From positions 1,061,498-1,125,497 of the forward strand of contig NW_003314292.1 of the NCBI RefSeq assembly GCF_000143415.4: a DNA stretch of 64,000 nucleotides, written 5' to 3'. Positions 21,477-64,000 of this stretch are shown here, piece after piece; position 1 is the first letter of the stretch; every line of letters begins with the position of its first letter. Under the pieces are notes generated by a model. It had not been told where the DNA came from and made no database searches. It worked only from the letters and a program-made list of their open reading frames with translations. This DNA is from Selaginella moellendorffii (taxonomy: Eukaryota; Plantae; Lycopodiophyta). A program made the position numbers and the translations under genes.

Positions 21477-21478
21477 TT

Positions 21479-21662
21479 NNNNNNNNNNNNNNNNNNNNNN
21501 NNNNNNNNNNNNNNNNNNNNNNNNNNNNNNNNNNNNNNNNNNNNNNNNNNNNNNNNNNNNNNNNNNNNNNNNNNNNNNNNNNNNNNNNNNNNNNNNNNNN
21601 NNNNNNNNNNNNNNNNNNNNNNNNNNNNNNNNNNNNNNNNNNNNNNNNNNNNNNNNNNNNNN
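21479..21662. other. Assembly gap
   Basis: 184 N. Confidence 1.
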
Positions 21663-24099
21663 ATTCTCTAGAGGCTTAAACAAAAGTATCATAAGTACTT
21701 CAAACCTTAGTTAAGATAAGGAAGAGAAAGTTAGAAAAAATTGTTTTTCATATAACTACATTAAATTAAGAGCTTGTATATTATAGTGGTATATAAAAGT
21801 GATAAAAACTTCTTATAATTACCCTAAAACTACATTATAATTTTTATACAAAAATATTTAATTAATTTCTAAACTAGTTTTATGATATTTTTAAATAAAA
21901 ATAGTTTCATAATTTTAAATTTTTCCTATAATTAGTTGATTTTTATAAATAAAATTTTAATAATTTTTATTACTTTATACCTCTTTATGTACTAATACAA
22001 TCACCCCTTTGGAAATATAAATTTTTGTTGTTTAGAAATATTTAGGATTTAAGGTTTAGGGTTTATAAAAAATGATCAATACTTAGACTTTTACTCATCT
22101 AGATTAGTTAGAGGAGGGGACTTTTTACTAGAAAGGAGAGGATTTTTTTTTCTTTTTAAGAAGGGAATTTACTTTTGTTATGGACTACTTGGATTATTAG
22201 GTAATGGTGAAAAATCATTTAGAGTGTTTAGTAAATTAGTAGTTGGTGAATCTCAAATTTAGAAAACTCGAAAGGTTGAAAAGCACAAGTAAACACACAT
22301 TGCCTTCTCCCACCTTGAAGTGTTAATATAAAACTTAAGAATATATGTTGAAAGGTAACAAGCATTGATATGGTTATTCACAAATTTGAAACAAATGTGG
22401 GGTAGTTAGTAAAAGGAAGTATAACAAGAATACACCCCAACCTACTTAAGATTGAACATTATTTTGGCTGGAGCTGGCAATCTTGTTAACTATCAATACT
22501 TAATATTTCAAACACTTATAGAGATTGATACACATTTGGAATGTGACTGTTAACTTTCTTTAACCTATGTATCTATATAACTAAAATTAAACTTTCAATC
22601 TATAAAAAAAATTTGCCAATTGTAAACCTATAAAATACCATTAATCTTATATGGATCCTAACCTTCACTCAAAATAGCTTATTGCATGCCATTAAAAGAT
22701 TGAGAGGGCTCATTAAGAATTGAGGGAACAATCCTGCTAAATGGGAGTGGAATTGAGATAGAAGGAACAAGTAGTAAGTTCTCAATTTTATTCATGCCTT
22801 ATATATGCATGTCATATGTGTTAAATTTCCTTCTCTCCTTTCATAACAACTAATGCACATGCAAGTTTTACTAGACAGCTATTAAATAAGATAAAAATTT
22901 ATCAAAATATTTCAACAAGACATAGTTAAAGAAATTATCTTTTGACAGTTACCCCACTATCTTGGCTGGCAACTCTTCAATATTATAGAAGATTAGTACT
23001 GCCCAGAAAATGCTGGGTGAATACAAAAATCTCTAATTGAATGCAATTTATTTCTGCAATTTTGATATCTTTATGACATTGTCCTCTTTTATTTGGCTTG
23101 TATTCTATATAAAAATATAGTTATAATTGTCATATACCTGGACAATATGAACCATCTGTTGTATTATGAGTCTTGATATCTCACTATGTTTTAAAATTTT
23201 AAGAACATTAATATATTACTTAGACAAAGTAGAAGAACAATTATAAAGAATATTTTTATTAATATAGATGCAGTATTACTGAAGAACTTTAGAACACAAA
23301 GATATTAAGTATACCAACATATTACTATCTAAGAAAAAGTAAAAATAATTACCAGGAATAATTATTATTAATATAGATGTAGGAAGGAAACTTAATTATA
23401 TGGAATTTTTATAGCACTAAGATTTTAAGAACTTAGTCATGGCTCCATAGACTTACATGTCATTCCCAAGTAAAGAGCCATACCCAAACTTCTATATACC
23501 CAATCTTAGATTGCAAGAAAAATAGTTACATCCAAGCCTCCCTGAGCAAAGATCCTATGGCAATGGGATTTGTAATGATTATCTTTCTAAATCTTGCATT
23601 AATTAGTAAAATACACAATGTTTTCTTAAGTAGACTAAAATCCTTCTAAGACATTTAAATTTAAATGATAGCCTACCTGTCTACTTATTTGCCAGAATTA
23701 TTTTGACTTTTTTAATACTTAATACACTTCATAGATTAATATAAAAAAAGTACATCTATTTTTAATTTGAAAGGTTGTTTCTATATTTGTTGTTGTGATC
23801 ATGGAGCTACATTCTTGATAAGACCAAGCCAACCCAGCCATGTTTGAGCTGTGGAATGTCATCTTGGTTTTAAATTTAACTCTGATACCTAGATTACAGG
23901 CAAATGCATATTGCTGGATCAGTACAGACAAAGGAATGAAGAATTGTCATGTAGAATTGCTCAAAGCCATGGCTGCCAGGTTCAAGGCGACAGGACACTC
24001 ACCGCCATGGTCATGGAGCTTTCATACCGGAGTGTTGCTTGGAGAGTGTGCTGGGAGCTTCAAAACTGTAGCTGTATTATAACCCTCCCTGTTTATTCT

Positions 24100-39353: not shown

Positions 39354-40335
39354 TTACACCTTCTTGACGCCATTTGGATGGATCTCTGCCGCGAACTGGA
39401 CGCTGTCGACGATCTTCGCCCCGCGTGCGGCAGTGAGATATAATCCCATATGGTGCGCGAGATCCTGCGCATCAATTCACCAAATCAATCACGGTAGGAT
39501 ATTTGAGGGAATGTTTCATACTTGTGGATGCGCCACAGCGCCAATTTCCTTCGCAACTGCCAGAGGCAAATCATAGGTGGAGCATCCTTGAGCGTAGACC
39601 ACGATTTCTTCCAGCGGTGGCGAGATCCCGTGGTTCCTGACCGAGGTCATCGTCGCCACGAAATCTAGCACACAAATGTCCGTGCAAACCCCCACCACCA
39701 AGATCTGGAAGAATTTTAATGCAAGCCTTTCTTCTTGGACAAAGAAAGAATTTTTCCTTACCCGTTGAATCTTGTTTGCGTTGATCCAGTCCACGACCGT
39801 GTTGGATCCATCTGGTCTCATCGCTCCCACAAATCCATTAATGCAATCCTTTCGCACGAGCACAACCTCGTCATCGTCCTCGAGCCACTTAAGGTCTGAT
39901 CCAAGCGAAGAATCACTAGATAGCGATCGAAATCGACGAGATTTTTCGAGGGCACCGACCTGGGACGAGTTCTTCCTCTCCAGAGCCCACAAGGCAATGC
40001 GGGGGATACGGATTCTCCGGCTTGTTTGGGTCGTGGCAATCCAGAAACGCGAGAACAGGCAAGTGCCTGGATCGAAATTCTCTGGCGATCCTCACGGTCT
40101 CGTCGACCATGCGCTCCACTTGAGCATCTGGGGCCCGAGGAGCCTGCATAGATCAATAAGAAAGTCGAGCGAGAGAGTGGATTCCTCTACTGACCAGATT
40201 TCCGTGACCAACGGTGCAGAATCCGTTGACTTCGTCGAGGACGACGAGCCCAGTTCGCTCGTCATCCCCAATTCTAATGCACAAGTGCTCCATCCGGACA
40301 GGGAGCTCCGCCTTCACCCACGAAATCAAATCCAT
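39354..40335 (-). CDS. Nicotinamidase / isochorismatase-like hydrolase (NIC1-like)
   Basis: GLVVLDEVNGFC, FLDCHDPNKPENPYPPHC, KDCINGF and VVGVCTDICVLDF; five exons join in frame. Confidence 0.93.
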
Positions 40336-40851
40336 GGTGCAGCGATGACGGTGACGAACCCTAAATATGTATACAAGCAAAGCATGAAAGTTTGACTCTT
40401 TTAACCACTATTATCTGATCTGGACCATTATCAAATGGAGGGTAGGGATTGCACAACAGCACAACATGAAATGTTGTCATTAAGCATTTGTTTTAGTTTA
40501 TAACTACGTTAGAGTTTTTGTAATTTTTGCTAATGGTTAAGTACCCTGGAAAAATGTTCTTGAAAAATGAATTTTAATAATGTTATGTATACTCAATAAG
40601 TGCTATAAAAGGTTGACATGTGTTGTTTGATGACTTTTATGATTATTTAAAAACCTATCTAAATATTTGAATTTATAGCTCAATTTTGTAAAATGTGCTA
40701 CTAAGATGTTGATAATGGGGATACAATTGGATAATTCTAACAATATATTATGAGTTGTTTTTGCTAGTTACTATAGTAATACCGAACCTGTAGTAATTAT
40801 TAATAGAATATTAGGTTTTTAAAGCTTTCATATATTAGATGGTCATTTACT

Positions 40852-40852
<1 letters not shown>

Positions 40853-40899
<47 letters not shown>
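40853..40899. repeat. (AAT)n microsatellite
   Basis: About 15 perfect trinucleotide units. Confidence 0.97.
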
Positions 40900-40900
<1 letters not shown>

Positions 40901-41852
40901 TATAAAAAAATTATATATTTTTCCTAAATTGCATAATATTTATATGATACCAGAAAATTAATATTACAATTTATAAAATTAATGTGGAGGAATAATTTTA
41001 ATTATAATCTTAATTAAAAAATATTTAATTTAATTTCTAGTGTGAGTGCATAGAATATAAAAATGGAATACAAAAATGTGCATATCAATTAGCCCAAAAA
41101 CCTTAGATTTTATACATGAGCAAATAATCTAGATTGAAATCAATTCAACAACTATCAAAATCCCACTATATTAATATTAGTATATGGCATTATAATTGTA
41201 TACTTGGACTTCACATCATCCCTTCCTCTCATAATGATGAAAAAAAATTAAGGTTCTCTAGTAGAAGGGTTGGAATCTAGAAGAATATTAGGAAGAGGCA
41301 TCGGTGAATCTGTAAATAATGCCATTTATTCCTACTCCCTTGTATAAAGTGGTTTTAAATGTTACATATTCATAATTTTTGGAGGATCAACCTATTAAAT
41401 GTCATGTCAAATTTTATAAATTTGCAATCTAACTTGCTAGAGCACTTAATATTAAACAAATTACATATCATAAAATTGGGAAAATAAATTAACTCTAAAT
41501 CATTTATTTTATACTTTGCAAGGGGATGATAATAGGAGTTATAATGCCATTCTTGTTCCACTTGTAGGCAGCCCAATGTCAAATTCAATTCATTTGCATT
41601 TTTATTTAAAGTAATTCTTATGTATTATAATGATTTACTTTGTGATAGCAAACATAATATATAATATTTTTTAAATGTTATTCCTAGAATCAAACTTTGA
41701 ACACTTAATTAGTTTTAATGGAAAAAATTATGTATAAAATTCAACTGTGTTTAAAAATTTTAATTATAGTTTATTGAATGCCAAATTAATTTCATCATTT
41801 AGATTTAAGGACATTAATACTATTTATTAGAGTGATATAATAATAATATCTT

Positions 41853-43745
41853 CTAATTAATATTAAACAAGTCCATCTCCATACTACTTGAGCTTTGGGC
41901 CTCAACTCGGGCGAGAAGGGTCCATCCATCTCCAGATGCATGTAGGTCGTTCACGGCCACAACCCTCACGATGTCCCCAAATTCTATGTTCATGTATCCC
42001 TGAAGAAAATAACCAGTCAAAAGTACAAGAAGAAAAACAATAATACCTGGTATCTCTTGAGAAAAGCTTGAAGTTCTCTCATCTTTGATTTCATTCGCGC
42101 GTGTTCGTTGCTCGCTATAGCGGCACTTACTTCCAAAGGGGAGTGTCCGATCATCCTCTCAACCAGCTGGAAAATCGGAGACCGTAGTCTTGACTAAACA
42201 GAATTGAAGCTTTACCTCGTGGTTCACTAAAGCTTCTGTTAAAAGGCTCCCATCTTCGATGTATATCGCCAGCCGGTATGCATTGCGATCCTTGAAAAGG
42301 AACTCTTTCACGGCTGTAAGGAAACACTGTATCCAGAAAACGAATCGTGCTTTCTTTTTTCTTTTCTTTTGTTACCTTAACTCGGCCTGATTGAACTACA
42401 CCGGACTCCATAAACCGCCTCTGTAGAACCGCCAGATACGTAAAGGGAGGGGACTCCAGGCTGTCTGCGGCTGAAAAATGGACGGGCATATGTCACGAAA
42501 ATCTGAAGATCATAAAACTTACTGCGCAGTTGTCTTCTACTCCTGGTTTCATTGGATTGGAGGGAAAGCATACGAATACGCGAAGTTCCCAGGCCGATAG
42601 AAGTCTCGGAAGGTGTGCCAGACAAGGTCCGATGCGTAGTTTCGTCCTGTCCTGGAGGTGAACATCAAAAGCATTAGGCAGGGAGAGAAAACCTGAAAGG
42701 CCTTCTTTGTGTTTACTTGGTGTTTGTTCACTGTAGGAATATGAACCGCGAGAAAAATCTTCTATAGAAACAGGTGCTTGCCTTCCTGAAGACAAAAAAG
42801 TAGAGACAGAAAATCAAAATACAAGGATAGAAGAACGAAAGAAAGAAGGCAAACACAGTCACTGTGCAAAAGTTAGACCTGTATATGGATGATCACGAAC
42901 AGTCGAAGAAGGTTGCTGCTCACTTCCAGGATTGGCTGCAGCACCATTGTTTTCTTGGACGTCAGGAGTTCGGGGCCAGGCAGCTTGTGTAAGTTGCTCT
43001 TCCAACGATGGTGGAGTAGTACCACGCGGGTGCCTGCAAATATCCTTAACTAGTACACGAAGAAGAAAACTTTACCTGTTTCCCCGAGGAGGTTTGTTTA
43101 CTTGATGTACCACTCTCTGTCGAGCCTCTTCAAGCTCTTGGACAACACCTCCTAGAACAGTAACAATTTCCGGGACAAGAAGAAACATCCCTCTCCGGAT
43201 GCAGACATTCCTTACGCAAATCTGCGGTTGGGAGAAAGAAAAATCATGGAAAAGACTTTAAAGGATTTCTTGAACGTGTACCTTCAAACCAGCTGGTTGT
43301 AAGACTTTGAGCTGTGGGATAGGACGATACTCAATGCCAAAAACTCGTTGAGCACCGTCGGTCATGGATAGCTTCAAGCATCGACTTCCAATTCCAGCAT
43401 TTCTTTCCTGGTAGCGATCCTTGAGGCCGCAGCAAATGTCCACCGTTTCATCTACCTGTGTGCCATGCTCCCGTCGATAAAAAAAAATATAGAAAAACTT
43501 TCACTTACTTGTAGAACGAAAGGGCCCGCTAGCTCCACTTTGTGCATCGCCTGGACCCCTGGAGGAAGCACAGCATCGGTGACGAGATTGAAATCGGCAG
43601 CGAGGAGCTGCGCAAAGCATTTCTCGGCGCACAAGTCTACCGGCAACTGTGACGCTCCGATCTGCTCGCGCAGGCAAGAAGAAAGCCCCTGCGCCTTAGG
43701 CCGCATTCCGCGAGAAGCCATAATCTCCACAACCCGCTCCTCCAT
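41853..43745 (-). CDS. RMI1: RecQ-mediated genome instability protein 1, apparently full length
   Basis: LAGPFVLQVDE, RCLKLSMTDG..VFGIEYRPI, IRRGMFLLVPE..VLGG (OB fold 1); PFTYL, IEDGSLLTEALV, MIGHSP (C-terminal OB fold). Confidence 0.9.
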
Positions 43746-43836
43746 CGAAATCCCAAAACCCTACTAGGGTTCTAAGCATCCCGCCATTTTGCTAGCTTGA
43801 AAGGTTCCAGGAATATGCTTGCCAAGCAAGGGCTTT

Positions 43837-44322
43837 ATGGTGTTTTGCCGCGCGCACTCTCTTCTCTTCCAGATCGCGCATTGCGGCAATTCGATCCTGC
43901 CGTGCCGAGGATATCGTTCCCCAAGACGCGCCACGGCGTGACATGGGACGATCCCTGCCACTGGCTGCGAAATTCGGACGAATCAGCACGCGCAATCGAC
44001 CATGGCTGGGACAAGGGAGCTGCAGCGCCAGATCCGCCAGGAAATGGCGAGTAGGATGGAGAAGGAGCTCGCGTCGCTGCCAGAGCGCTGGGGGCATTGG
44101 TGAGTTCTTCCCGTTTGAACTTTTTAGTTTTTGGCTTAGACGAAAAGCTTAATGACAATGTAGGAACTATTTCGTGCAGATCCCACAAGGGAAAGAGTTT
44201 CCCATCTACTCGAGACGAAGAGCCCGCAAAGGTGGAAGGCTGAAGGCTTTCTTGACAAAATTTTCTCGACAAGAAGCAGAGTGAAGTGATGATCGACATC
44301 AATGCGCTTGCTGCGAAGCACG
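43837..44322 (+). pseudogene. Oligopeptidase B 5' fragment
   Basis: KTRHGVTWDDPCHWLRNS etc. matches 59040-59522, with frameshifting deletions; truncated. Confidence 0.9.
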
Positions 44323-44683
44323 ATAAAGTTTTGAGGATCTATCCTTCGTTCTCTCGTCGTAGCTATCATGAGGATGATCGATCGAAAGGACCTGCATTGC
44401 GATGAATGAGATTCACAAAATTCGGCACTCTGAGACCAGGAAAGGAAACAAAGCGACTAGAACAAAAATCAGGGAAGAGCTCACCACAGGCCACCGCCAA
44501 CGGCCTGTGGCAACAAGTTTAATAATCCAACACATGATTCAACACAGCAATCCAGGAACATATAACTCGTCTTTGAAAGCATCGAGCTCATAAGACCAAA
44601 CGTTTTGTGACGACTTAGTTTATAGCAGAACTTAGAGAAATTTTTGTCACTGCCTCGTATAACTCAGGTTTTTCCATGGTGAA

Positions 44684-44715
44684 GCGCAGCTGGTGTAGTG
44701 GTAGTATCCTCCCAC
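44684..44715 (+). pseudogene. 5' half remnant of tRNA-Gly(CCC)
   Basis: GCGCAGCTGGTGTAGTGGTA-GTATCCTCCCAC resembles the plant cytosolic tRNA-Gly(CCC) 5' half as I recall it, minus ~5 nt; no T arm. Confidence 0.5.
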
Positions 44716-44897
44716 CTCATCCGGATGGCTTATCTCCAAACAGATAGAGTCCAATGTTTTGGGCGAGAAGACACTAGCGTCACTACTTGGCCTTGTCCCA
44801 TGAAATCGCCACCGTCCATCAAACATCATCCCAGCCGTCGATATAAACCCGTTTTGAAGAAGCTAGGTCTTCCATTCAGCAAGAAGGTCTGGGAGCG

Positions 44898-45821
44898 ATG
44901 GCGCGTGACACCGGTGAGTTGAGCGAGGATGACTGTAGTGAGCTTCTCAAGTTTTACATGAGGGGCAAGCGGCTGGGATGTGGAGGGCAAGGGCAGGTTT
45001 TCATGATCCATAATGGCCGCAACACATATGCTGGAAAGTTGTTTCGATCGGGGAGTGATGCCGAGAGAGAAGCTCGGCTCATGTCCAAGCTTCATGCCTG
45101 CCCTGGGGTCGTCTCCTTCAAGGGCTTTGTCCGGGAGAGAGATGGTGCCAAGTGCTATGGCACCATCGTCATGGAGCTGTGCGGCCCAAACCTATGCGAG
45201 GGATTGATCAACTGCGGGCCGATGAGGGAGGAGGATGCAGCGAAGACCATCAAGAAGCTGGCTGAAACGCTCAAGGAGATCCACTCCAGGGGAATTATCC
45301 ACCGGGATCTCAAGCCGGAGAACATTCTTGTCAAGCTCAATGCCACTGGTGTGCACGATGTTCTGATTGGAGACTTCGGGATAGCCACAGACCTGCACAG
45401 GGAGATGTCAAAGTACTGTGGCACGGAAAAGTATATGGCACCAGAGGTGATGGCGAGGAAGGGCCGCAAGGGAGAATCACAGAACTTCTACACGGCAGCC
45501 ATTGATGTGTGGGGTTTGGGAGTCATTGCGTACGAGCTGTTGAAAGGTCACAAATCGAGAATGGAAATCGATTTCTTGAGAGCGGGAGCATTTCCAACTG
45601 GTTTTGGCTCAGACCAGGCGGAGGATCTTCTCTGGGGGATGTTAGCTGTCGAACCGAGCAAGAGGGTAACGCTGGACCGTGTGCTTGCACATCCCTGGAT
45701 CGTGAAGCATTGCAGCAGCAGTAGCAAGATCGAGACGACGACACGCAGCAGGCGCTGTGGAATGAAGAGGAGTCTTCCCAGCGGCAGCGACTTGATCGTG
45801 AAAAAAGCTCGTGCAGCTTAA
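44898..45821 (+). CDS. Intronless Ser/Thr protein kinase (CAMK-like), 307 aa
   Basis: GCGGQGQV, catalytic Lys (YAGK), HRDLKPEN, DFG, YMAPE and DVWGLG motifs. Confidence 0.92.
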   Translation: MARDTGELSEDDCSELLKFYMRGKRLGCGGQGQVFMIHNGRNTYAGKLFRSGSDAEREARLMSKLHACPGVVSFKGFVRERDGAKCYGTIVMELCGPNLCEGLINCGPMREEDAAKTIKKLAETLKEIHSRGIIHRDLKPENILVKLNATGVHDVLIGDFGIATDLHREMSKYCGTEKYMAPEVMARKGRKGESQNFYTAAIDVWGLGVIAYELLKGHKSRMEIDFLRAGAFPTGFGSDQAEDLLWGMLAVEPSKRVTLDRVLAHPWIVKHCSSSSKIETTTRSRRCGMKRSLPSGSDLIVKKARAA

Positions 45822-46031
45822 GAACAAAAGCCAGCACCAGTTCGGTAAGCATCGTTTTTGATTGAAGAGTACAGGTACTAACTTTGCTTGCTTGGTCACC
45901 GGGTGGAATTTTTTTTGTGAGACAATGATCTTCTTGTCGAGAAAGATTTTCTATGGCAATGCAAGTACTGTCTTTGCAAGTTATGAAGTTTCTTTTCTAT
46001 TCTCTTGATGGGAACAGTCAAATTCAATATA

Positions 46032-46142
46032 GTGGAAGGGATCGCTGATGATCCTGGCGGCAAATTGGAAGAGCTTCAACTCGCGCAAGAAGCCTCCATC
46101 CATTTCCGGATAGTCGTTCACGGCCACAACCCTATGCTGGAG
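46032..46142 (-). pseudogene. Remnant of RMI1 last exon and 3' flank
   Basis: AGGGTTGTGGCCGTGAACGAC..GATGGA matches 41900-41970; the counterpart is at 60303-60410. Confidence 0.7.
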
Positions 46143-46317
46143 AACATAAAAGATTCCCATAACCTTCAATGTCAACTGTAGGGGAAGAACCAGTGCTGCT
46201 CAATGAGATGAAGTTGCCATTCCCAACAGTGGTGGAGCCATATTGTACAAGCAAACCCACACTAACTTGCACCAGAAAGGAGCATAGAATGAGGGAAGAC
46301 ACCACTGAAGCTGCCAT
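46143..46317 (-). pseudogene. Truncated copy of the secreted PEBP-like gene
   Basis: Signal peptide plus LLVQYGSTTVGNGNFISLSSTGSSPTVDIEGYG, then breaks into the RMI1 remnant. Confidence 0.8.
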
Positions 46318-46509
46318 TAGAAAATTGATTGATGAATTGATGAGCATTTATTCCTTGATTTATATAAAATGCAACACCTAATTCTGTCGATGCATTTGAT
46401 AAATTGTGCAAGTTTTCTATAAAAAAATAGTGAATCAAATTGTCTTACCAAGAACAAATAAATACATATACAACTGAAAACAAATGACTACAAATACTTT
46501 GATCATAGC

Positions 46510-46758
46510 TCAACTTGACATGACTCAACATATCTCTTCATCATTTCTTTTGCAAGACCACCAGTAGAAGAAACAATGAGTGAACACAAACAATTGTAGC
46601 CTGCTTGGCAGCATGGATGCTCAAGAACAGTGCTCAAGAACAGTGCCAGACACACAGGGATGCATTATTTTAGGAGATGAGCGAGAATTCTCCCAATTGG
46701 GGAAATGGCCAATTGCGACCAAGCTGAGGACAAGAACCTTTAGTCCTCTAGAATCCAT
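46510..46758 (-). pseudogene. Deleted copy of the nsLTP gene
   Basis: Homologous to 48985-49305, with several small deletions. Confidence 0.8.
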
Positions 46759-48279: not shown

Positions 48280-48773
48280 TTGAAATAACATCAATGCGTG
48301 AAGGAGACGGTTTGGAGAGGGCTTCCACAGTGGTATTGATGGATGATATCAGCCAGTGAGTTGACAAGTCGACTATCGGCTTTACCAAGGGATTCTTCTG
48401 TGGCACAAACAAGTGTGGTTCCTTGCATTGAATGGATTTGGGTTGAGAGATACATAAGGCTCCAAAATACTGCCCTTTACAGCTCTTGTACCAAGCCACC
48501 ATCATCAAATTTTAAAACCAAAACAAATAAGTTGAAGTTACCTTGCAATCCATAAGTTGATGCTATTTGAGCAGCCATAACCACTGAGAACAAACGAACA
48601 GTGCCATTCTTCCCATATCCTTCAATATCAACTGCAAGGGCAGAACCAGTGCTGCTCAATGAGATGAAGTTGGCATTCCCGACAGTGGTGGAGCCATATT
48701 GTACAAGCAAACCCACGCTAACTGGAACCAGAAAGGCGCAGAGAACGAGCCAAGACACCAGTGAATCCGCCAC
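48280..48773 (-). pseudogene. PEBP-like pseudogene
   Basis: Homologous to 56078-56660 over both exons; start codon reads GTG; deletions and frameshifts. Confidence 0.8.
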
Positions 48774-48984: not shown

Positions 48985-49305
48985 CTACAAAATACTTTGA
49001 TCATAGAACTTACATTGATAATCCTCTGGGAGCTTGAGTTGACATGACTCAACATATCTCTTCATCATTTCTTTTGCAAGAACACCAGTAGAAGAAACAA
49101 TGAGAGAACACAAACAATTGTAGCCTAGAACATTCACCGCTTGGCAGCAGTTCATGTCTGGATGCTCAAGAACAGTGCCAGATGCTACACTGGGAACGCA
49201 TTCTTTGAGGTGATGAGCTCGATCGCACTGAGAATTCCCGCAATTGGGGAAATGGTCAATTGTGACCAAGCTGAGGACAAGAACGGTTAGTGCTCTGGAA
49301 TCCAT
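48985..49305 (-). CDS. Non-specific lipid transfer protein / prolamin-fold secreted protein
   Basis: Hydrophobic N-terminus and 8-Cys pattern C-C-CC-CLC-C-C; a GTAAG donor near 49013 suggests a short second exon, so the 3' end is uncertain. Confidence 0.8.
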   Translation of the reverse strand: MDSRALTVLVLSLVTIDHFPNCGNSQCDRAHHLKECVPSVASGTVLEHPDMNCCQAVNVLGYNCLCSLIVSSTGVLAKEMMKRYVESCQLKLPEDYQCKFYDQSIL

Positions 49306-49517
49306 TAGGGGCAACTCCACAGGTAGCAGCAAGGAAGCCTTTCTAGCTTCGAATATTTCTTAGCTAACAAGTAAAAACATGTAGTTTGTTTGACAAATTG
49401 AGCTACATTGTGATTAAAGTAATAGACTTTTAAAAATCAAACTCTTACTATATTAGAAAGGTGGTGCTAAAAGTTGGTGACTAATTGATATTACCTTTGG
49501 CGCTAAAGTATTGCGAT

Positions 49518-53827: not shown

Positions 53828-54132
53828 CCTCGGCCACCGAACCTCTTTGGCTTCTTGCTAAACCGACAAGGTCCGTGGACTACCTTTAGGGCAGACGGTA
53901 AAGGTATATGCTTTTTATCTTGTTACGCGGGAACAGAAATTTTAGGTTAATTCTTCTTCTCTCTCCTCCCACGTTTGTGGAGCTGGGAGCGAGCTCTCGC
54001 CCATCCACCAATCTCCTCCAATGCGGTGCTAATCCGCGAATCGCCGCGCCAGGCAAGGAGATCTGGAGCTCCGCTGGGGCATTTTCACAATGCGGAGGTA
54101 GGGTTCTCCACTCCACGGGGTGTCCTCCCGCC

Positions 54133-55608
54133 ATGGAGCCATGGCGCTTCCTCAAGCCCCAAATGTGGGACGATCTCTTCACGCCCCAGGCGGCGTGGAT
54201 CGAGGAGACAGGCCTGGTGGATTTCATCAAGCTCAAGCTCAAGGCCATGGATGTGGAGCTCGTCCGCAAGGCGACGCAAGGGTATGACTCCGAGTCCAAG
54301 ACGATCCACGTCCCGGAGCTTGGCAGCATGGAGCTGAGCGACAAGAGCGTCGGCGAGGCGCTGTGCCTCCCTTACGGCTCCGATCTGGAAGAGATCCCCA
54401 CCGAGTATAACTCCCAGCTCCATGGCCCCGAGATCCAGAAGTACTTCAGCGAGAAAGGCCATAGCCAGGCCAGTGGCTGGAAGCTGTGCGAGGTGAAAGA
54501 GCACGTCATGCGCGTCTACCTCGAGTTCCTGGTGAAGAGGATTGGGCTTCGTCTCAACAATCAAAGGGTGAGTGGAGCCACCGCCTATCCGGCCTGTGCC
54601 ACTCGCTCCACCAAGAAGATCTTCAACTGGGCACAGTTCGTGGTGCTCAAGATGCACAAGGAGCTCAAGGAAGGCAAGCCGGTCACCACCGCTCACTACT
54701 TGAGCATGGTTCTCCAGCACCACTTCGATCTTCCAGGGGTGGATTTGCAGCCGACGATGCGCTTCGCCACCACTGGCGAGCAGTCGGGAAAGAGGAAGAG
54801 ATTGTCGTGGGAGGACAGGTCCAACGAGCGGGATGGAACTCCGGACGAGGATTTGATCGTGGAAACGCTACGTCAGGGTGACGAGCTTCGAGAGGTGGCC
54901 ATCAGGCCTTGTTCTTCGTCGTCGTCGCTGCCTTCTTCCAAGTTTGTCTTCGGTGAATCGTCCGGCGGCTCCAGAGGCGGAGATCTCACCTTCTGCTCGA
55001 TGCAGCAGAAGCAGGTTTTGAGCGCCGTGGACGGGATCTTGAAGCAGATGAAGCAGACCGTGATCCAGCAAAAGGAAGCGCTCATCTCGTCCCTGTGGCA
55101 AGCCCAGCAAGCGGTGGCCCAGCTCGAGACCCCGGAGCGTTCTCTCGACTTCGATCAGCTCACCGCGAGGTACGCGCAGCTCCAGCAGGACTACCGCTCC
55201 GTGTGCCACCAGCGAGACGTGCTGCTCCAGCAAGTCACGGATCTCCAAGACCAGTTCAGAGCTTCCGACGAGCTCCACTCGCAGAGGCTCGAGGAGGCGA
55301 ACGAGCGGTTGGCAAAGGCCACACGGAAGCTCACCGAGGCTAAGCAAGCGAATAGAGCAAAGCACTCGCACTCCACGGCCGATCTTCACGAGAGCGACTG
55401 CATCATGGAGTATGGATTCAGCCGATCGGAGCTCGAGAATGTGGAGCATATGATCATTGGGCATCGCTCGAGCTCCCAGGCGAAGCACGCTCGTTTCCCG
55501 ATCAGTTGCGAAGACAGCCATCACGGGCGAGGCAATGCAAGTGCCGAGGCAGTAAGCAGCTGGTTGTTTGCTACTTCCGCGGCGTCCAAGGGGCAGTTTA
55601 CCATATGA
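54133..55608 (+). CDS. Intronless protein with a plant-transposon-like N-terminal domain and C-terminal coiled coil (491 aa)
   Basis: Long GC3-rich ORF; GLVDFI..VELVRKATQGYD..ELSDKSVGEALCLP..FNWAQFV recalls accessory proteins of plant transposons (family assignment is inference); KRKR NLS-like motif. Confidence 0.7.
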   Translation: MEPWRFLKPQMWDDLFTPQAAWIEETGLVDFIKLKLKAMDVELVRKATQGYDSESKTIHVPELGSMELSDKSVGEALCLPYGSDLEEIPTEYNSQLHGPEIQKYFSEKGHSQASGWKLCEVKEHVMRVYLEFLVKRIGLRLNNQRVSGATAYPACATRSTKKIFNWAQFVVLKMHKELKEGKPVTTAHYLSMVLQHHFDLPGVDLQPTMRFATTGEQSGKRKRLSWEDRSNERDGTPDEDLIVETLRQGDELREVAIRPCSSSSSLPSSKFVFGESSGGSRGGDLTFCSMQQKQVLSAVDGILKQMKQTVIQQKEALISSLWQAQQAVAQLETPERSLDFDQLTARYAQLQQDYRSVCHQRDVLLQQVTDLQDQFRASDELHSQRLEEANERLAKATRKLTEAKQANRAKHSHSTADLHESDCIMEYGFSRSELENVEHMIIGHRSSSQAKHARFPISCEDSHHGRGNASAEAVSSWLFATSAASKGQFTI

Positions 55609-56077: not shown

Positions 56078-56660
56078 TTAGTTGAGCGAGGTGGTGAAGG
56101 AGACAGTCTGGAGGGGACTTCCACAGTGGTACTGTTGGATGATATCGGGCAGTGAGAGAACAATGCGACTACGCATGGGCTTCACCAAGGGATTCCTCTG
56201 TGGAACGAGCACGAAATCATATGTGTGGTTCTTGGCGTTGAATGGATTTGGGTATGGGATATTCTTGCCAGTGTTGGAAGGAGATACATAAGGCTCAAGA
56301 ATGTTACTCTTCACAGCTCCTACAAACAAAAACCACAAATCCAATCTATCAATTAAAGATGAAAAAAGAGAACTTGCCAGAGGTGCCTGCTGGAATGTTT
56401 GCAATCCAAAAGTTGACGTAAGGATAAGTTTTGTTTGGAGTCGAGAGTGCCTTTTGATCCGCCATCACCACCGAAAACAGGCTAACACTGCCATTCCCAT
56501 GAAATCCTTGAATGTCAACAGTGGGAGCTGAGTCAGTGCTGCTCAAGGAGATGAAGTTGCCATTTTCAACAGTGGTGGAGCTATATTGTACAAGAAGACC
56601 CACAGCTACATGAGCAAACAAGAAGCAAAGAAGAAAGCAAGACGCAATTGATACAGCCAT
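56078..56660 (-). CDS. Signal-peptide-bearing divergent PEBP-fold (FT/TFL1/MFT-like) protein, 174 aa, 2 exons (56660-56378, 56319-56078)
   Basis: GC-AG intron gives 525 nt in frame; colinear similarity to PEBP: LxVxY..V.NG..P.V.I.G..F..VM.D..W...IP..T..Y.SP..H.Y.FVL..Q..R..Y..G.P. Confidence 0.75.
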
Positions 56661-56829
56661 ATTCTTTAAAAATGATATTTTGCTTGGGCTATTCTTTTGA
56701 GATTTATATAAGACTAGGTAGCTAAAATTATGTCAAGTTTCTAATGAAATCTAATAAGTAAATTCAAATTGATGCTGCTGTTTCTTAGTAAAATTATATT
56801 TTCAAGAATTTCTGTCGGCAAACTTGAAT

Positions 56830-59599: not shown

Positions 59600-60410
59600 A
59601 GTACGGTTCTCTCTTGCCTGGGCGAGAAGATCGGAGCGTCTCAGTTACCGGTAGATTCTCGCGCCGAGAAATGCTTCGCGCAGCTCCTCCGACGCAGAGG
59701 TCCAGGCAATGCACTTATGTTCTACAAGTAAGTGGAAGGTTTCTATAGCTTTTCATCGATGGAAGCATAGCACACAGATAGATGAAGCGGTGGACATTTT
59801 CAAGGATCACTACCAGGAAGGAATTGGAAGTCCAAGCTTGAAGCTATCCATGACCGATGATGCTCAACGAGTTTTTGGCATTCACAGCTCAAAGTATTAC
59901 AAGTCTTTGCCTTGATTTTTCTTTTCTCCCAATGCGTAAGGAATGTCTACATTCGGAGGGGGATGATTCTTCTCGTCCCGGAAATTGTTACTGTTCTTGG
60001 AGGAGCTTGATGAGCCAAGAAAACAGTGGCGCTGCACCGGAAGTGAGCAGCAACCTTCTTCCTGATCAGGTCTAACTTTGCGCAGTGACTGTGTTTGCTT
60101 TGTTCTTCCTCTCCTTGTATTTTGATTATCTGTCTCTACTCTTTTGTCTTTAGGAAGGCAAGCACCTGTCTCTATAGAAGATTTTTCTCGCGGTTCGGAT
60201 TCCTACAGTGAACAAACACCAAGTAAACACAAGGAAGGCCTTTCAAGTTTTCTCTCCATGGGTAATTCTTTTTATCTTCACTTCAGAACAGCATCGGACC
60301 TCCTCCAACATAGGGTTGTCCCCGTGTGCATCCGGAAATGGATGGAGGCTTCTTGCCCGAGTTAAAGCTCTTCCAATTTGCCACCAGGATCATCAGCGAT
60401 CCCTTCCATT
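59600..60410 (+). pseudogene. Heavily deleted RMI1 pseudogene
   Basis: Colinear fragments of RMI1 from 5' to 3' with many deletions; start lost. Confidence 0.88.
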
Positions 60411-60619
60411 GTATTGAATTTTACTGTTCCCATCAAGAGAATAGAAAAGAAACTTCATAACTTGCAAAGACAGTTCTTGCATTGCTATAGAAAATCTTTC
60501 TTGACAAGAAGATCATTGTCTCACAAAAAACATTCCACCCGGTGACCAAGCAAGCAAAGTTAGTACCTGTACTCTTCAATCAAAAACGATGCTTACCGAA
60601 CTGGTGCTGGCTTTTGTTC

Positions 60620-61543
60620 TTAAGCTGCACGAGCTTTTTTCACGATCAAGTCGCTGCCGCTGGGAAGACTCCTCTTCACTCCACAGCGCCTGCTCCGTGT
60701 CGCCATCTCGGTCTTGCTACTGCTGCTGCAATGCTTCACGATCCAGGGATGTGCAAGCACACAGTCCAGCGTTATCCTCTTGCTCGGTTCGACAGCTAAC
60801 ATCCCCCGGAGGAGATCCTCCGCTTGGTCCGAGCCAAAACCAGTTGGAAATGCTCTCGCTCTCAAGAAATCGATCTCCATTCTTGACTTGTAACCCCTCA
60901 ACAGCTCGTATGCAATGACTCCCAAACCCCACACATCAATGGCTGCCGTGTAGAAGCTCTGTGATTCTCCCTTGCGACCCTTAGTCGCCATCACCTCTGG
61001 TGCCATGTACTTCTCCGTGCCACAATACTTTGACATCTCCCTGTGCAGGTCTGTGGCTATCTCGAAGTCTCCAATCAGAACATCGTGCACACCAGTGGCA
61101 TTGAGCTTGACAAGAATGTTCTCTGGCTTGAGATCCCGGTGGATAATTCCCCTGGAGTGGATTGCCTTGAGCGTTTCAGCCAGCTTCTTGATGGTCTTCA
61201 CTGCATCCTCCTCCCTCATCAGCCAGCAGTTGATCAATCCCTCGCATAGGTTTGGGCCGCACAGCTCCATGACGATAGTGCCATAACACTTGGCACCATC
61301 TCTCTCCCTGACAAAGCCCTTCAAGGAAACGACCCTAGGGCAGGCGTGAAGCTTGGACATGAGCCGAGCTTCTCTCTCGGCATCACTCCCCGATCGAAAC
61401 AACTTTCCAGCATATGTGTTGTGGCCATTATGGATCATGAAAACTTGCCTTTGTCCTCCACATCCCAGCCGCTTGCCCCTCATGTAAAACTTGAGAAGCT
61501 CACTACAGTCATCCTCGCTCAACTCACGGGTGTCACGCGCCAT
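60620..61543 (-). CDS. Second kinase copy, open frame but probably impaired
   Basis: 307 aa, near-identical to 44898-45821, but DFG reads DFE and the glycine loop reads GCGGQR. Confidence 0.75.
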   Translation of the reverse strand: MARDTRELSEDDCSELLKFYMRGKRLGCGGQRQVFMIHNGHNTYAGKLFRSGSDAEREARLMSKLHACPRVVSLKGFVRERDGAKCYGTIVMELCGPNLCEGLINCWLMREEDAVKTIKKLAETLKAIHSRGIIHRDLKPENILVKLNATGVHDVLIGDFEIATDLHREMSKYCGTEKYMAPEVMATKGRKGESQSFYTAAIDVWGLGVIAYELLRGYKSRMEIDFLRARAFPTGFGSDQAEDLLRGMLAVEPSKRITLDCVLAHPWIVKHCSSSSKTEMATRSRRCGVKRSLPSGSDLIVKKARAA

Positions 61544-61699
61544 CGCTCCCAACCTTTCTAGACCTAGCTTCTTCAAAACGGGTTTATATCGACGGCTGGG
61601 ATGATGTCTGATGGACGGTAGCGATGCCACGGGATCTTTGCTGTGAAAAACGAGAACCCAAAACATTGGTAAGGATATACCAGAAAATACTGGATCATA

Positions 61700-62655
61700 A
61701 AATCTATCTGTAACTTTCCTCAACATTGTGCCTGAAGTTTTTGGATCTCCCAGAAAAGCCCGTCCTGTAGAAAGGCTCGAGCAACAGGCAATTACCTCAG
61801 AGGGCGTCTGCGAGTTGACATTAATCAAAACGTATTGCTAGTTTTTGGTTCTTGTAACATTGACAAAGTTCTTTGGATTGTTGTCGTGATAAATTAGAAA
61901 CAAAACAGTTATTCTAGAAGAAAGTTTAACTAGAAACCTGAGGTCAATGTGCTGAATAACTACAAGTGTAGTAGAGATATTCTCCACCACTCCACACTTA
62001 TTACACCATCGGTTTTGTGTTCCAGGAGGAGGCTATTGGTCTCCAAGTCTTTGATAAACAATGTGAAAATCTCATTGCCACCCAAGTCGATTGTGTATGC
62101 TAACAGTTTGTGGTCTCTGGATAGCTTGAAAACACCAAGCTACGCATGGCCTACACTTGTGTAATTAGGAAGAAGAGAGAAACAAAACAAGAAAAGATCC
62201 TCAAAACTTTACTGTGCTTTGCAGCATCACTTCACTCTGCTTCTTGTCGAAAAAACTTGTCAAGAAAGCCTTCAGCCTTCCACCTTTGCGGGCTCTTTGT
62301 CTTGAGTAGATGGGAAACTCTTTCCCATCTGCACGAAATAGTTCTTACATTGTCACTAAGCTTTTCGTCTAAGCCAAAAACTAAAAATTAAAACGAGGAA
62401 GAACTCACCAATCCCCCCAGCGCTCTGGCAGCGACGCGAGCTCCTTCTCCATCCTACTCGCCATTTCCTGGCGGATCTGGCGCTGCAGCTCCCTTGTCCC
62501 AGCCATGGTCGATTGCGCGTGCTGATTCGTCCGCAGCCAGTGGCAGGGATCGTCCCATCTCACGCCGTGGCGCGTCTTGGGGAACGACGCCGCAGGATCG
62601 AATTGCCGCAATGCGCGATCTGGAAGAGAAGAGAGCGCGCGAGAGCGGCAAAGGG
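61700..62655 (-). pseudogene. Oligopeptidase B 5' pseudogene fragment
   Basis: Matches ~58420-59515, with deletions and stops. Confidence 0.9.
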
Positions 62656-62711
62656 CCGACCCTGCTTGGCAAGCATATTCCTGGAACCTTTCAAGCTCGC
62701 AAAATGGCGGG

Positions 62712-64000
62712 ATGCTTAGAACCCGTCCTAAGGCGCAGTGGCTTTCTTCTTGCCTGCGCGAGCAGATGGGAGCGTCACAGTTGCCGGTAGACTCGTGCGC
62801 CGAGAAATGCTTTGCGCAGCTCCTCGCTGCCGATTTCAATCTCGTCACCGATGCTGTGCTTCCTCCAGGGATCCAGGCGATGCACAAAGTGGAGCTAGCG
62901 GGCCCATTCGTTCTACAAGTAAGTGAAAGTTTTTCTATATTTCTTTTTATCGATGGGAGCATGGCACACAGGTAGATGAAACGGTGGACATTTGCTGCGG
63001 CCTCAAGGATCGCTACCAGGAAAGAAATGCTGGAATTGGAAGTCGATGCTTGAAGCTATCCATGACTGACGGTGCTCAACGAGTTTTTGGCATTGAGTAT
63101 CGTCCTATCCCACAGCTCAAAGTGTTACAACCAGCTGGTTTGAAGGTACGCGTTCAAGAAATCCTTTCAAGTCTTTTCCTTGATTTTTCTTTCTCCCAAC
63201 CGCAGATTTGCGTAAGGAATGTCTGCATTCGGAGAGGGATGTTTCTTCTCGTCCCAGAAATTGTTACTGTTCTAGGAGGTGTTGTCCAAGAGCTTGAAGA
63301 GGCTCGACAGAGAGTGGTAAATCAAGTAAACAAACCTCCTCGGGGAAACAGGTAAAGTTTTCTTCTTCGTGTACTAGTTAAGGATATTTGCAGGCACCCG
63401 CGTGGTACTACTCCACCATCGTTGGAAGAGCAACTTACACAAGCTGCCTGGCCCCGAACTCCTGACGTCCAAGAAAACAATGGCGCTGCAGCCAATCCTG
63501 GAAGTGAGCAGCAACCTTCTTCGACTGTTCGTGATCATCCAGTGACTGTGTTTGCTTTCTTTCTTTCGTTCTTCTATCCTTGTATTTTGATTTTCTGTCT
63601 CTACTTTTTTGTCTTCAGGAAGGCAAGCACCTGTTTCTATAGAAGATTTTTCTCGCGGTTCATATTCCTACAGTGAACAAACACCAAGTAAATACAAAGA
63701 AGGCCTTTCAGGTTTTCTCTCCATGCCTAATTCTTTTGATGTTCACCTCCAGGACAGGACGAAACTATGCATCGGACCTCGTCTGGCACACCTTCCGAGA
63801 CTTCTATCGGCTAGGGAACTTCGTGTATTTGTATGCTTTCCCTCCAATCCAATGAAACCAGGAGTAGAAGACAACTGCACAGTAAGTTTTATGATCTTCA
63901 GATTTTCGTGACATATGTCTGTCCATTTTTCAGCCGCAGACAGCCTGGAGTCCCCTCCCTTTACGTATCTGGCGGTTCTACAGAGGCGGTTTATGGAGTC
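62712..64000 (+). pseudogene. RMI1: RMI1 duplicate (original start and one splice donor deleted; runs off the window)
   Basis: Near-identical to 42404-43700 inverted; alternative in-frame ATG at 62712; intron donor deleted at ~63541. Confidence 0.8.

What the first reader, a model, noticed from the sequence alone, without database searches (positions are those of the whole stretch)
56078..56660. Apparently secreted, highly divergent PEBP (florigen-fold) protein
Seen: 174 aa with a ~21-aa signal peptide (MAVSIASCFLLCFLFAHVAVG) and three N-glycosylation sequons (NGS, NKT, NHT). The mature part tracks FT/TFL1/MFT end to end, and its single phase-1 GC-AG intron falls near the position of the third FT-family intron. 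The anion-pocket motifs DPDxP, HW and GIHR are replaced by DQKAL, FW and KNHT, with a ~10-aa insertion. Known: characterised plant FT/TFL1/MFT proteins are cytosolic or nuclear and lack signal peptides; a secreted PEBP exists in animals (PEBP4). Inference: an apoplastic neofunctionalised PEBP family (lipid carrier, protease inhibitor or mobile signal).
Basis: partly seen in the sequence, partly recalled or inferred. Interest (0 to 1): 0.78.

Follow-up and report, generated by a model that had tools for sequence, protein, structure and literature searches.

The report
Secreted-type divergent PEBP gene, Selaginella
This is an intact but unannotated spikemoss gene for a very diverged relative of the flowering hormone FT that carries an export-type leader and has lost FT's pocket motifs; it belongs to a small lycophyte-only gene family whose function is unknown, and no RNA from this copy was seen.

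Summary
A two-exon minus-strand gene (56660-56078; 58-nt GC-AG phase-1 intron) encodes 174 aa. It is collinear without gaps with Selaginella moellendorffii paralogs that UniProt auto-names 'PEBP-like protein'. The window is S. moellendorffii v1 scaffold GL377596.1; I found no annotated model for this copy.

Pfam finds nothing on the exons or on the closest paralog. PEBP ancestry is nevertheless firm:
- Paralog against solved structures: Hd3a E 4.5e-5.
- Subfamily profile against Pfam-positive lycophyte relatives: hhalign 99.5%.
- AlphaFold model of the paralog against FT: Z 16.4, rmsd 2.4 A over 139 residues.

A 10-residue insertion is present.

A hydrophobic leader with a V-x-G site and two conserved glycosylation sequons point to the secretory pathway. 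This was tested only by heuristics.

dN/dS is 0.12-0.21, including on this copy's own branch, so the protein has been under selection. All four paralogs compared have a GT donor where this copy has GC. Two subsampled RNA-seq runs gave no reads on the gene, so splicing and expression are unproven.

An exhaustive profile search found relatives only in S. moellendorffii and one clubmoss. The scan has flagged this family before on other DNA of this genome. Function is unknown.

The parts
56378..56660 (-). Exon 1: start codon, leader and N-terminal half of the PEBP fold (residues 1-94 plus the first base of Gly95)
   Evidence: 74% identical to P0001 residues 1-94 without gaps. phmmer against solved structures: Hd3a E 0.031, TFL1 E 0.036.
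56598..56660 (-). Signal-peptide-like leader, residues 1-21, with a putative cleavage site after Gly21 (V-x-G)
   Evidence: Heuristics. Paralogs keep the hydrophobic character while the sequence diverges. In the AlphaFold model of the paralog this part lies outside the fold and has low pLDDT.
56445..56459 (-). DQKAL (residues 68-72), in the place of the PEBP signature DPDxP
   Evidence: Alignment with Hd3a; family alignments.
56409..56414 (-). Asn83-Phe84, in the place of the canonical pocket His-Trp
56320..56377 (-). 58-nt phase-1 intron with a GC donor (CTG|GCAAGT) and an AG acceptor
   Evidence: Four paralogs have CTG|GTAAGT at the same site. Splicing of this copy was not observed.
56078..56319 (-). 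Exon 2: C-terminal half of the fold (residues 95-174) and the TAA stop
   Evidence: 85% identical to P0001 residues 97-174. dN/dS on this copy's own branch is 0.12.
56249..56278 (-). Ten-residue insertion (residues 109-118) ahead of the GxHR position
   Evidence: hhalign gap of 10 columns against Pfam-positive relatives; MAFFT alignment.
56222..56233 (-). KNHT (residues 124-127), in the place of GIHR. The His is kept, and NHT is a conserved N-glycosylation sequon.
   Evidence: Subfamily B has NNS at the same columns.
56703..56710 (-). TATATAAA, 43-50 nt upstream of the ATG; a possible core promoter
   Evidence: Read from the sequence. The paralog locus L001 has TATAAAT at a similar distance. 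This is a consensus match only.

Best explanation
This is an intact, unannotated member of a lycophyte-restricted branch of the plant PEBP (FT/TFL1/MFT) superfamily.

Shown: the mature part (residues ~22-174) is homologous to plant PEBPs. In the closest full-length paralog it is predicted to adopt their fold. The coding sequence has been under purifying selection, including on this copy's own lineage.

Inferred:
- The N-terminal 21 residues act as an ER signal peptide cleaved after Gly21.
- The protein is N-glycosylated at the conserved Asn56 and Asn125 and leaves the cell or stays in the endomembrane system.
- The FT N-terminal arm is replaced by the leader. DPDxP, the pocket His and the GxHR Arg are replaced, and a 10-residue insertion sits at the mouth of the pocket. 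It therefore cannot work like FT/TFL1 (14-3-3/FD complex) or like a canonical phospho-ligand-binding PEBP.
- My best guess is an extracellular binding protein: a stoichiometric inhibitor or ligand carrier of the kind seen for secreted or inhibitor-type PEBPs elsewhere, probably with a defence- or surface-related role. The family is tandemly amplified and often lies beside LTP genes.

Identity is near certain, secretory routing is likely, and the specific activity is a low-confidence guess.
For: Gene model.

Homology:
- P0001 against solved structures: Hd3a E 4.5e-5, FT 3.6e-4, TFL1 2.6e-3.
- Subfamily profile A1: Hd3a E 7.4e-4.
- A1 against Pfam-PBP-positive relatives: hhalign 99.5%, E 1.4e-22.
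- Wider family profile: Hd3a E 2e-20, end to end.

Fold:
- AlphaFold2 model of the paralog: pLDDT 80, pTM 0.78.
- Foldseek: all 49 hits at E<=1e-3 are PEBPs, topped by Hd3a/FT.
- VIA: FT Z 16.4, rmsd 2.4 A over 139 residues, covering model residues 19-174.
- The independent ESM Atlas model is nearest to a TFL1 cluster, TM 0.71.

Selection: dN/dS 0.16-0.21 against four paralogs. On this copy's own branch: leader 0.14, mature exon 1 0.18, exon 2 0.12.

Secretory routing:
- Leaders are hydrophobic in all family branches; the subfamily A leaders keep the site before LLVQY.
- Sequons are conserved in subfamilies A and B.
- A Cys pair is conserved in subfamily C.
- The language-model neighbours are secreted PEBP clusters.

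Restricted range: 10 hits at E<=1e-3 among 1.84 billion representatives, nine from S. moellendorffii and one from Diphasiastrum.
Against: - Pfam PBP does not match the exons or P0001.
- Window exon 1 alone reaches only E 0.03 against Hd3a, and exon 2 alone finds nothing.
- The fold was predicted for a paralog about 79% identical, not for this protein, because the joined step was left out.
- No SignalP-type predictor or experiment was available. The leader has no basic n-region and an 18-residue hydrophobic core, so a signal anchor is possible.
- No RNA reads lay on the gene in two RNA-seq runs (9.2 million reads each, about 12% of each run). The only contig crossing the intron is unspliced and probably DNA.
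- This copy's donor is GC where all four paralogs have GT.
- No LTP gene lies beside this copy.
- There is no functional evidence of any kind.
Confidence: 0.55

Rival explanations
1. This copy is a recently disabled or silent paralog. The T-to-C change at donor position +2 impairs splicing; intron retention would stop translation after 103 codons. Alternatively the promoter is inactive. Either way the family is real but this member no longer makes the 174-aa protein.
For: It is the only one of five compared genes with a GC donor. Two RNA-seq runs gave zero reads on the gene. I found no model for it in the v1 GenBank annotation, although the window is that assembly. The same window holds a decayed copy and a fragment of the family.
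Against: Both exons are intact. dN/dS on this copy's own branch is 0.12-0.18 over dS of about 0.38, so any disabling must be recent. The rest of the donor (GCAAGT) matches the consensus that GC-AG introns need (general knowledge of plant splice sites). The intron is U-rich with a clean TAG acceptor. The RNA test was shallow and covered few conditions.
Confidence: 0.25
2. The hydrophobic N-terminus is not a cleaved secretion signal but a signal anchor or an ER/vacuole-targeting element. The PEBP domain then stays membrane-tethered or inside the endomembrane system rather than in the apoplast.
For: There is no basic n-region. The hydrophobic stretch of about 18 residues runs straight into the first beta-strand. 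No predictor or experiment was available.
Against: A conserved small-x-small site lies directly before the first strand in all subfamily members. The more distant relatives P0010, P0006 and P0012 have classical leaders. There is no C-terminal KDEL/HDEL; the protein ends in TSLN.
Confidence: 0.15
3. It is an ordinary intracellular MFT/FT-like regulator that acts through 14-3-3 and FD partners, and the leader is an artefact of start-codon choice.
For: The best sequence and structure matches are FT, Hd3a and TFL1.
Against: The ATG at 56660 is the first start after an in-frame stop, and all paralogs start there with equivalent leaders. The FT N-terminal arm is absent. DPDxP and GxHR are lost. The Arg aligned in P0001 with Hd3a's Arg, which from memory is a 14-3-3 contact, is Ser in this copy.
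Confidence: 0.03
4. The family was acquired horizontally from an animal or nematode secreted PEBP, as NCBI's automatic names ('26 kDa secreted antigen-like', 'protein D2') might suggest.
For: Automatic names of the related subfamily. The language-model neighbours are arthropod and chordate secreted PEBPs.
Against: Plant PEBPs outscore animal ones in sequence (76-68 bits against 60-46) and in structure (Z 16 against 12.5-13.3). The clubmoss relative has a phase-1 intron at the place where, from memory, FT-family intron 3 lies. The genes sit in ordinary plant genomic context.
Confidence: 0.02

Closest known systems
Plant EuPEBPs (MFT-like, FT, TFL1/CEN; structures 1wkp, 3axy, 1wko, 1qou)
   Same: Best sequence and fold matches, end to end from the first strand to the last. 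Kept residues are the first Asp of DPDxP, the Tyr two places before the pocket His, the His and Tyr of GxHRY, and the IP motif. The intron has the phase of FT-family intron 3 and lies 3 codons from its position. That position is counted from the IP motif; FT exon 1 length is from memory, and exon sizes of 62 and 41 bp are from PMC6514984.
   Different: An N-terminal leader replaces the FT N-terminal arm. DPDxP, the pocket His-Trp and the GxHR Gly and Arg are replaced. There is a 10-residue insertion, no C-terminal tail, two exons instead of four, and N-glycosylation sequons. Below the Pfam PBP threshold.
Signal-peptide-bearing lycophyte PEBPs: S. moellendorffii subfamilies B (P0007-9) and C (P0006, P0010, P0011) and Diphasiastrum complanatum P0012/P0021
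   Same: These are the nearest relatives outside its own subfamily (E 1e-13 to 7e-5 in a 1.84-billion-protein library). Hydrophobic leaders are seen in P0006, P0010 and P0012; P0011's N-terminus is weakly hydrophobic, and the subfamily B leaders were not examined. The lycophyte-only range is shared.
   Different: The clubmoss protein keeps HW and GIHR and passes Pfam PBP at 52 bits. Subfamily C passes Pfam at 26-34 bits, is intronless in the one gene checked (P0010), and has a conserved Cys pair and no sequons. This subfamily has gone furthest from the canonical motifs.
Secreted or periplasmic PEBPs of other kingdoms (vertebrate PEBP4, Toxocara TES-26, Trichuris Tm16 5tvd, E. coli YbcL 1fux)
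   Same: A PEBP fold behind a signal peptide. The language-model neighbours are such clusters. Tm16 and YbcL are structural matches at Z 13.3 and 10.7.
   Different: These are analogues, not orthologues: they score below plant PEBPs. To my knowledge they keep the canonical pocket motifs, which this protein has lost. That point is from memory and was not tested here.
Yeast carboxypeptidase Y inhibitor Tfs1 (1wpx_B)
   Same: A PEBP fold used as a stoichiometric protease inhibitor. Structural match Z 14.9 over 154 residues. It is a model for a non-lipid, protein-binding role.
   Different: It is cytosolic. From memory, inhibition uses its N-terminal segment, which this protein lacks. No protease partner is known here.

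Membership tests
PEBP superfamily (Pfam PF01161 PBP) | Match to the Pfam PBP profile above the gathering score (24 bits) | tested here: not met
   No hit for either exon at E<=10 or for paralogs P0001 and P0002. Relatives P0006, P0010, P0011 and P0012 pass at 26-52 bits.
PEBP superfamily (Pfam PF01161 PBP) | Significant sequence homology to proven PEBPs | tested here: met
   P0001 against Hd3a, E 4.5e-5. Subfamily profile, E 7.4e-4. hhalign to Pfam-positive relatives, 99.5% and E 1.4e-22. Window exon 1 alone is marginal, E 0.031.
PEBP superfamily (Pfam PF01161 PBP) | PEBP beta-sandwich fold | tested here: met
   Tested on the paralog about 79% identical, not on this exact protein. FT Z 16.4, rmsd 2.4 A over 139 residues. 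Foldseek E 1e-9, TM 0.65-0.73. The ESM Atlas model matches a TFL1 cluster at TM 0.71.
PEBP superfamily (Pfam PF01161 PBP) | Signature motifs DPDxP and GxHR lining the anion pocket | tested here: not met
   DQKAL and KNHT in their places. The pocket His-Trp is Asn-Phe.
Plant EuPEBP (FT/TFL1/MFT) | Four exons, with exon 2 of 62 bp and exon 3 of 41 bp (PMC6514984) | tested here: not met
   Two exons. Only one intron remains: phase 1, 3 codons from the position where (from memory) FT intron 3 lies.
Plant EuPEBP (FT/TFL1/MFT) | Cytosolic or nuclear protein without a signal peptide, with an N-terminal arm packed on the fold | tested here: not met
   A hydrophobic leader replaces the arm. The fold alignment starts at residue 19.
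Plant EuPEBP (FT/TFL1/MFT) | Binding to 14-3-3 and FD-type bZIP partners | not testable with these tools
The Arg aligned with Hd3a's Arg in P0001 is Ser in this copy.
Secreted PEBPs (by mode of action, not descent) | Cleavable N-terminal signal peptide | tested here: inconclusive
   Heuristics only: hydropathy 2.68 over 12 residues and a V-x-G site after residue 21, conserved in the subfamily paralogs. No SignalP and no experiment.
Secreted PEBPs (by mode of action, not descent) | Protein found outside the cell | not testable with these tools
   No proteomic data were available. No paper in the library names the paralogs' locus tags.

The most novel reading that the evidence does not exclude
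Lycophytes evolved a second, extracellular PEBP lineage from an MFT-like ancestor. It has progressively rebuilt the ligand pocket: the clubmoss form is still canonical, while the Selaginella subfamilies have lost the motifs and gained a glycan site at the pocket. It now acts in the apoplast or cell wall as a binding protein or inhibitor, possibly together with the lipid-transfer proteins it is repeatedly duplicated with. This would be a use of the florigen fold not known in plants.
Probability: 0.2. Interest if true: 0.75.

Novelty: new variant of a known kind. Interest (0 to 1): 0.5.

Why it matters
A wide survey (PMC8408984) states that lycophytes, like bryophytes, have only MFT-like PEBPs, and characterised plant PEBPs work inside cells. 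Here a multi-copy lycophyte lineage is under purifying selection, carries export-type leaders and has a dismantled anion pocket. If it is expressed, the florigen fold was recruited to the secretory pathway in an early vascular-plant lineage.

The family also offers a natural series of pocket states, from a canonical clubmoss form to the Selaginella forms, for asking what the PEBP pocket is for. For this copy specifically, the practical points are that I found no model for it in the GenBank v1 annotation and that it depends on a GC-AG intron.

Tried and rejected
- The word-index protein search with exon 1 alone was blind, because full-length relatives exceed 1.75 times the query length. Repeating it with the 103-codon open frame and region 1-94 found P0001.
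- Pfam on both exons and on P0001 found nothing relevant.
- phmmer of exon 2 against solved structures found nothing.
- Rfam on the whole window found nothing.
- RNA evidence: no run on record as RNA holds the stretch. Laying two raw RNA-seq runs and two contig sets gave no reads on the gene and one unspliced, probably genomic, contig. This is uninformative about silence.
- Exact look-up of the neighbouring 566-aa ORF found no record.
- Paper searches for the paralogs' locus tags and for 'PEBP-like' plus 'lycophyte' found nothing.
- I considered and rejected a spurious ORF (conserved frame, low dN/dS), a non-PEBP fold, an intracellular FT-like role and horizontal transfer from animals (see the rival explanations).

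Full report
**What is there**

The finding lies on the minus strand.
- Exon 1: 56660-56378, that is 94 codons plus one base.
- Intron: 56377-56320, 58 nt, beginning GCAAGT and ending TAG.
- Exon 2: 56319-56078, ending in TAA.
- Product: 174 codons.

The ATG is the first start after an in-frame stop. A TATATAAA box lies 43-50 nt upstream.

If the intron is not removed, the exon 1 frame stops after 103 codons.

I never joined them into one protein.

**Is the splice model right?**

The closest database protein is P0001 (SELMODRAFT_445941, Selaginella moellendorffii, 174 aa, UniProt auto-name 'PEBP-like protein').
- Exon 1 aligns to its residues 1-94 at 74% identity without gaps.
- Exon 2 aligns to residues 97-174 at 85% identity without gaps.

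The genes of P0001 and of three further paralogs (L001, L004 and two in L005) all have one short phase-1 intron (49-71 nt) at exactly the same codon. In all four the donor is CTG|GTAAGT. The window copy alone has CTG|GCAAGT.

It is a T-to-C change at +2 of a conserved donor. The remaining donor positions are consensus, which is what functional GC-AG introns need (general knowledge). Splicing of this copy was not observed.

**Source**

A 20,924-bp stretch of S. moellendorffii v1 scaffold GL377596.1 is 100% identical to window 34898-55821. No annotated protein corresponding to this copy turned up. The only hit to exon 1 in the 57-180 aa range is P0001 at 74%. The long fused model P0026 on the same scaffold comes from other copies, at 77% and 89% identity. 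The copy therefore appears to be unannotated.

**Is it a PEBP?**

Pfam says nothing for the exons or for P0001 and P0002. Other evidence is consistent and strong.
- phmmer of P0001 against all solved structures returns plant PEBPs as its four best hits: Hd3a 4.5e-5, FT 3.6e-4 (two distinct sequences) and TFL1 2.6e-3. A fifth row at E about 1 is noise.
- The subfamily profile A1 gives Hd3a 7.4e-4.
- Window exon 1 alone gives Hd3a 0.031 and TFL1 0.036. Exon 2 alone gives nothing.
- An exhaustive HMMER search of 1.84 billion representatives with A1 found just 10 proteins at E<=1e-3. Nine are from S. moellendorffii and one from the clubmoss Diphasiastrum complanatum.
- Four of these relatives pass the Pfam PBP gathering score: P0006, P0010 and P0011 at 26-34 bits, and P0012 at 52 bits.
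- Profile-profile comparison of the window's subfamily with these Pfam-positive relatives gives 99.5% probability and E 1.4e-22 over 144 columns.
- A profile of the whole lycophyte set matches Hd3a at 2e-20 from the first strand to the last.

An AlphaFold2 model of P0001 has pLDDT 80 and pTM 0.78.
- Foldseek matches Hd3a, FT, TFL1 and CEN best, at E about 1e-9 and TM 0.65-0.73.
- All 49 hits at E<=1e-3 are PEBP-fold proteins.
- VIA-align gives FT Z 16.4, rmsd 2.4 A, 139 residues, model residues 19-174.
- The ESM Atlas's own single-sequence model of P0001 is nearest to a TFL1 cluster, TM 0.71. The fold call therefore does not depend on my alignment.

Caveat: the fold was predicted for a paralog about 79% identical, not for this exact protein.

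**Motifs**

The alignments show the following.
- DPDxP is DQKAL (residues 68-72).
- GIHR is KNHT (124-127), with the His and the following Tyr kept.
- Ten residues (109-118) are inserted ahead of it.
- The Tyr two places before the canonical His is kept as Tyr81. From memory this is the position of FT Tyr85.

Within the lycophyte set there is a graded series:
- the clubmoss protein keeps HW and GIHR;
- Selaginella subfamily C has HYW and a lone His;
- subfamilies A (this one) and B have gone furthest.

**Intron position**

The clubmoss gene has a phase-1 intron in the tenth codon counted from the Ile of the conserved IP motif, plus a second phase-0 intron. From memory, with FT exon 1 at 201 nt, that is exactly where FT-family intron 3 lies. 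Exons 2 and 3 of 62 and 41 bp (PMC6514984) also imply phase 1.

In the window gene the intron is in the seventh codon from that Ile, in the same phase. 'Near the third FT intron' is fair. The three-codon offset lies in a loop with indels.

The one subfamily C gene I checked (P0010) is intronless.

**Secretory features**

Residues 1-21 form a hydrophobic leader: the 12-residue hydropathy maximum is 2.68, and a V-x-G site lies before Leu22. There is no basic n-region.
- Every subfamily paralog has an equivalent leader and site, although the sequence diverges.
- P0010, P0006 and the clubmoss protein have classical leaders.
- In the model the leader lies outside the fold and has low confidence.
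- It replaces the N-terminal arm of FT.

The three sequons are real.
- NGS/T56 and NHT125 are conserved throughout the subfamily.
- Subfamily B has NNS at the NHT columns.
- NKT76 is private to this copy, which in turn lacks the NTS110 of its paralogs.

Subfamily C has no sequons but has a conserved Cys pair.

These features fit ER entry. No dedicated predictor or experiment was available, so secretion is an inference, and a signal anchor cannot be excluded.

**Selection**

Nei-Gojobori dN/dS was computed exon by exon and the counts summed.
- Window copy against four paralogs: 0.16-0.21, at dS 0.66-1.05.
- All other paralog pairs: 0.12-0.23.
- Three-taxon branch estimates for this copy's own lineage: dS about 0.38, with dN/dS 0.14 (leader), 0.18 (mature exon 1) and 0.12 (exon 2).

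Exon 2 has therefore been translated in frame through most of this copy's separate history. Any loss of splicing would have to be recent.

The same window gives a contrast: a frame-broken copy at 48297-48773 and a fragment at 46159-46317.

**Expression**

No run on record as RNA holds the stretch.

I laid two raw RNA-seq runs (9.2 million reads each, about 12% of each run). They gave no reads on the gene and one read on the neighbouring gene's end.

A 447-nt contig from a small run of unknown type crosses the intron unspliced, as genomic DNA would.

This neither shows nor excludes expression.

**Context**

- Upstream of the gene (higher coordinates, same strand) is a prolyl-oligopeptidase S9 gene.
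- Downstream are a 566-codon ORF with no Pfam match and an ABC transporter gene.
- No LTP-like gene lies beside this copy. LTP-like genes do lie beside the decayed copy in the window and beside paralogs in L004 and L005.

**Literature and prior notes**

A broad survey states that lycophytes have only MFT-like EuPEBPs (PMC8408984). No paper in the library names the paralogs' locus tags. Automatic annotation already labels the paralogs 'PEBP-like protein' and labels subfamily C '26 kDa secreted antigen-like', 'protein D2' or 'FLOWERING LOCUS T-like'.

Earlier notes of this scan describe the same family at several other places in this genome. I used them as leads and re-tested fold, leader, motifs, taxonomic range and literature myself.

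**Verdict**

PEBP descent and fold and a secretion-type leader are supported in silico. Apoplastic location, function and expression of this copy are not shown.
- Best explanation: an intact member of a lycophyte-only, secretory-pathway branch of the plant PEBP family with a dismantled anion pocket, probably an extracellular binding or inhibitor protein.
- Main rival: this particular copy has recently fallen silent or lost splicing.

Noticed in passing
window 48297-48773 (-) and 48985-49332 (-): A decayed copy of the same PEBP-like family. It has frame breaks and a missing middle part, and about 47-51% identity to paralogs in one tblastn alignment. An intact-looking LTP-like ORF, 81% identical to the N-terminal part of P0003, lies directly upstream of it.
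   Followed up: partly
window 46132-46347 (-) and 46503-46758 (-): A truncated 5' fragment of the family (leader plus the first ~53 residues, then unrelated sequence). Beside it is a fragment of the LTP-like gene.
   Followed up: partly
window 42404-46142 versus 60303-64000: An inverted segmental duplication at 94-96% identity. It carries a protein-kinase gene on each arm (44898-45821 + and 60620-61828 -). The finding lies between the arms.
   Followed up: partly
L005:5001-6164 (P0003), and P0026 and P0004 on GL377596.1: GenBank v1 gene models fuse the LTP-like gene to the PEBP-like gene (P0003, P0026) or run the PEBP-like gene on into unrelated sequence (P0004). The PEBP-like gene at L005:5583-6164 has its own ATG and leader, so the P0003 fusion is probably an annotation artefact.
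   Followed up: partly
window 53908-55608 (+): A 566-codon, GC-rich (55%) ORF with no Pfam match, overlapped by long antisense ORFs. Part of it is annotated in v1 as a 491-aa gene with no Pfam family on record. An exact look-up of the 566-aa product found nothing.
   Followed up: partly
window 2603-4621 (-): A retrotransposon pol/gag ORF with zinc knuckle, aspartyl protease and reverse transcriptase domains.
   Followed up: no
window 18001-24000 and 40001-42000: Stretches with G+C of about 0.30-0.33, against 0.45-0.55 elsewhere.
   Followed up: no
L002:5001-5877 (Diphasiastrum complanatum): The clubmoss relative P0012 combines a classical leader with intact HW and GIHR motifs. It has a second, phase-0 intron after Gln139. 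From memory, FT-family genes have no intron there.
   Followed up: partly
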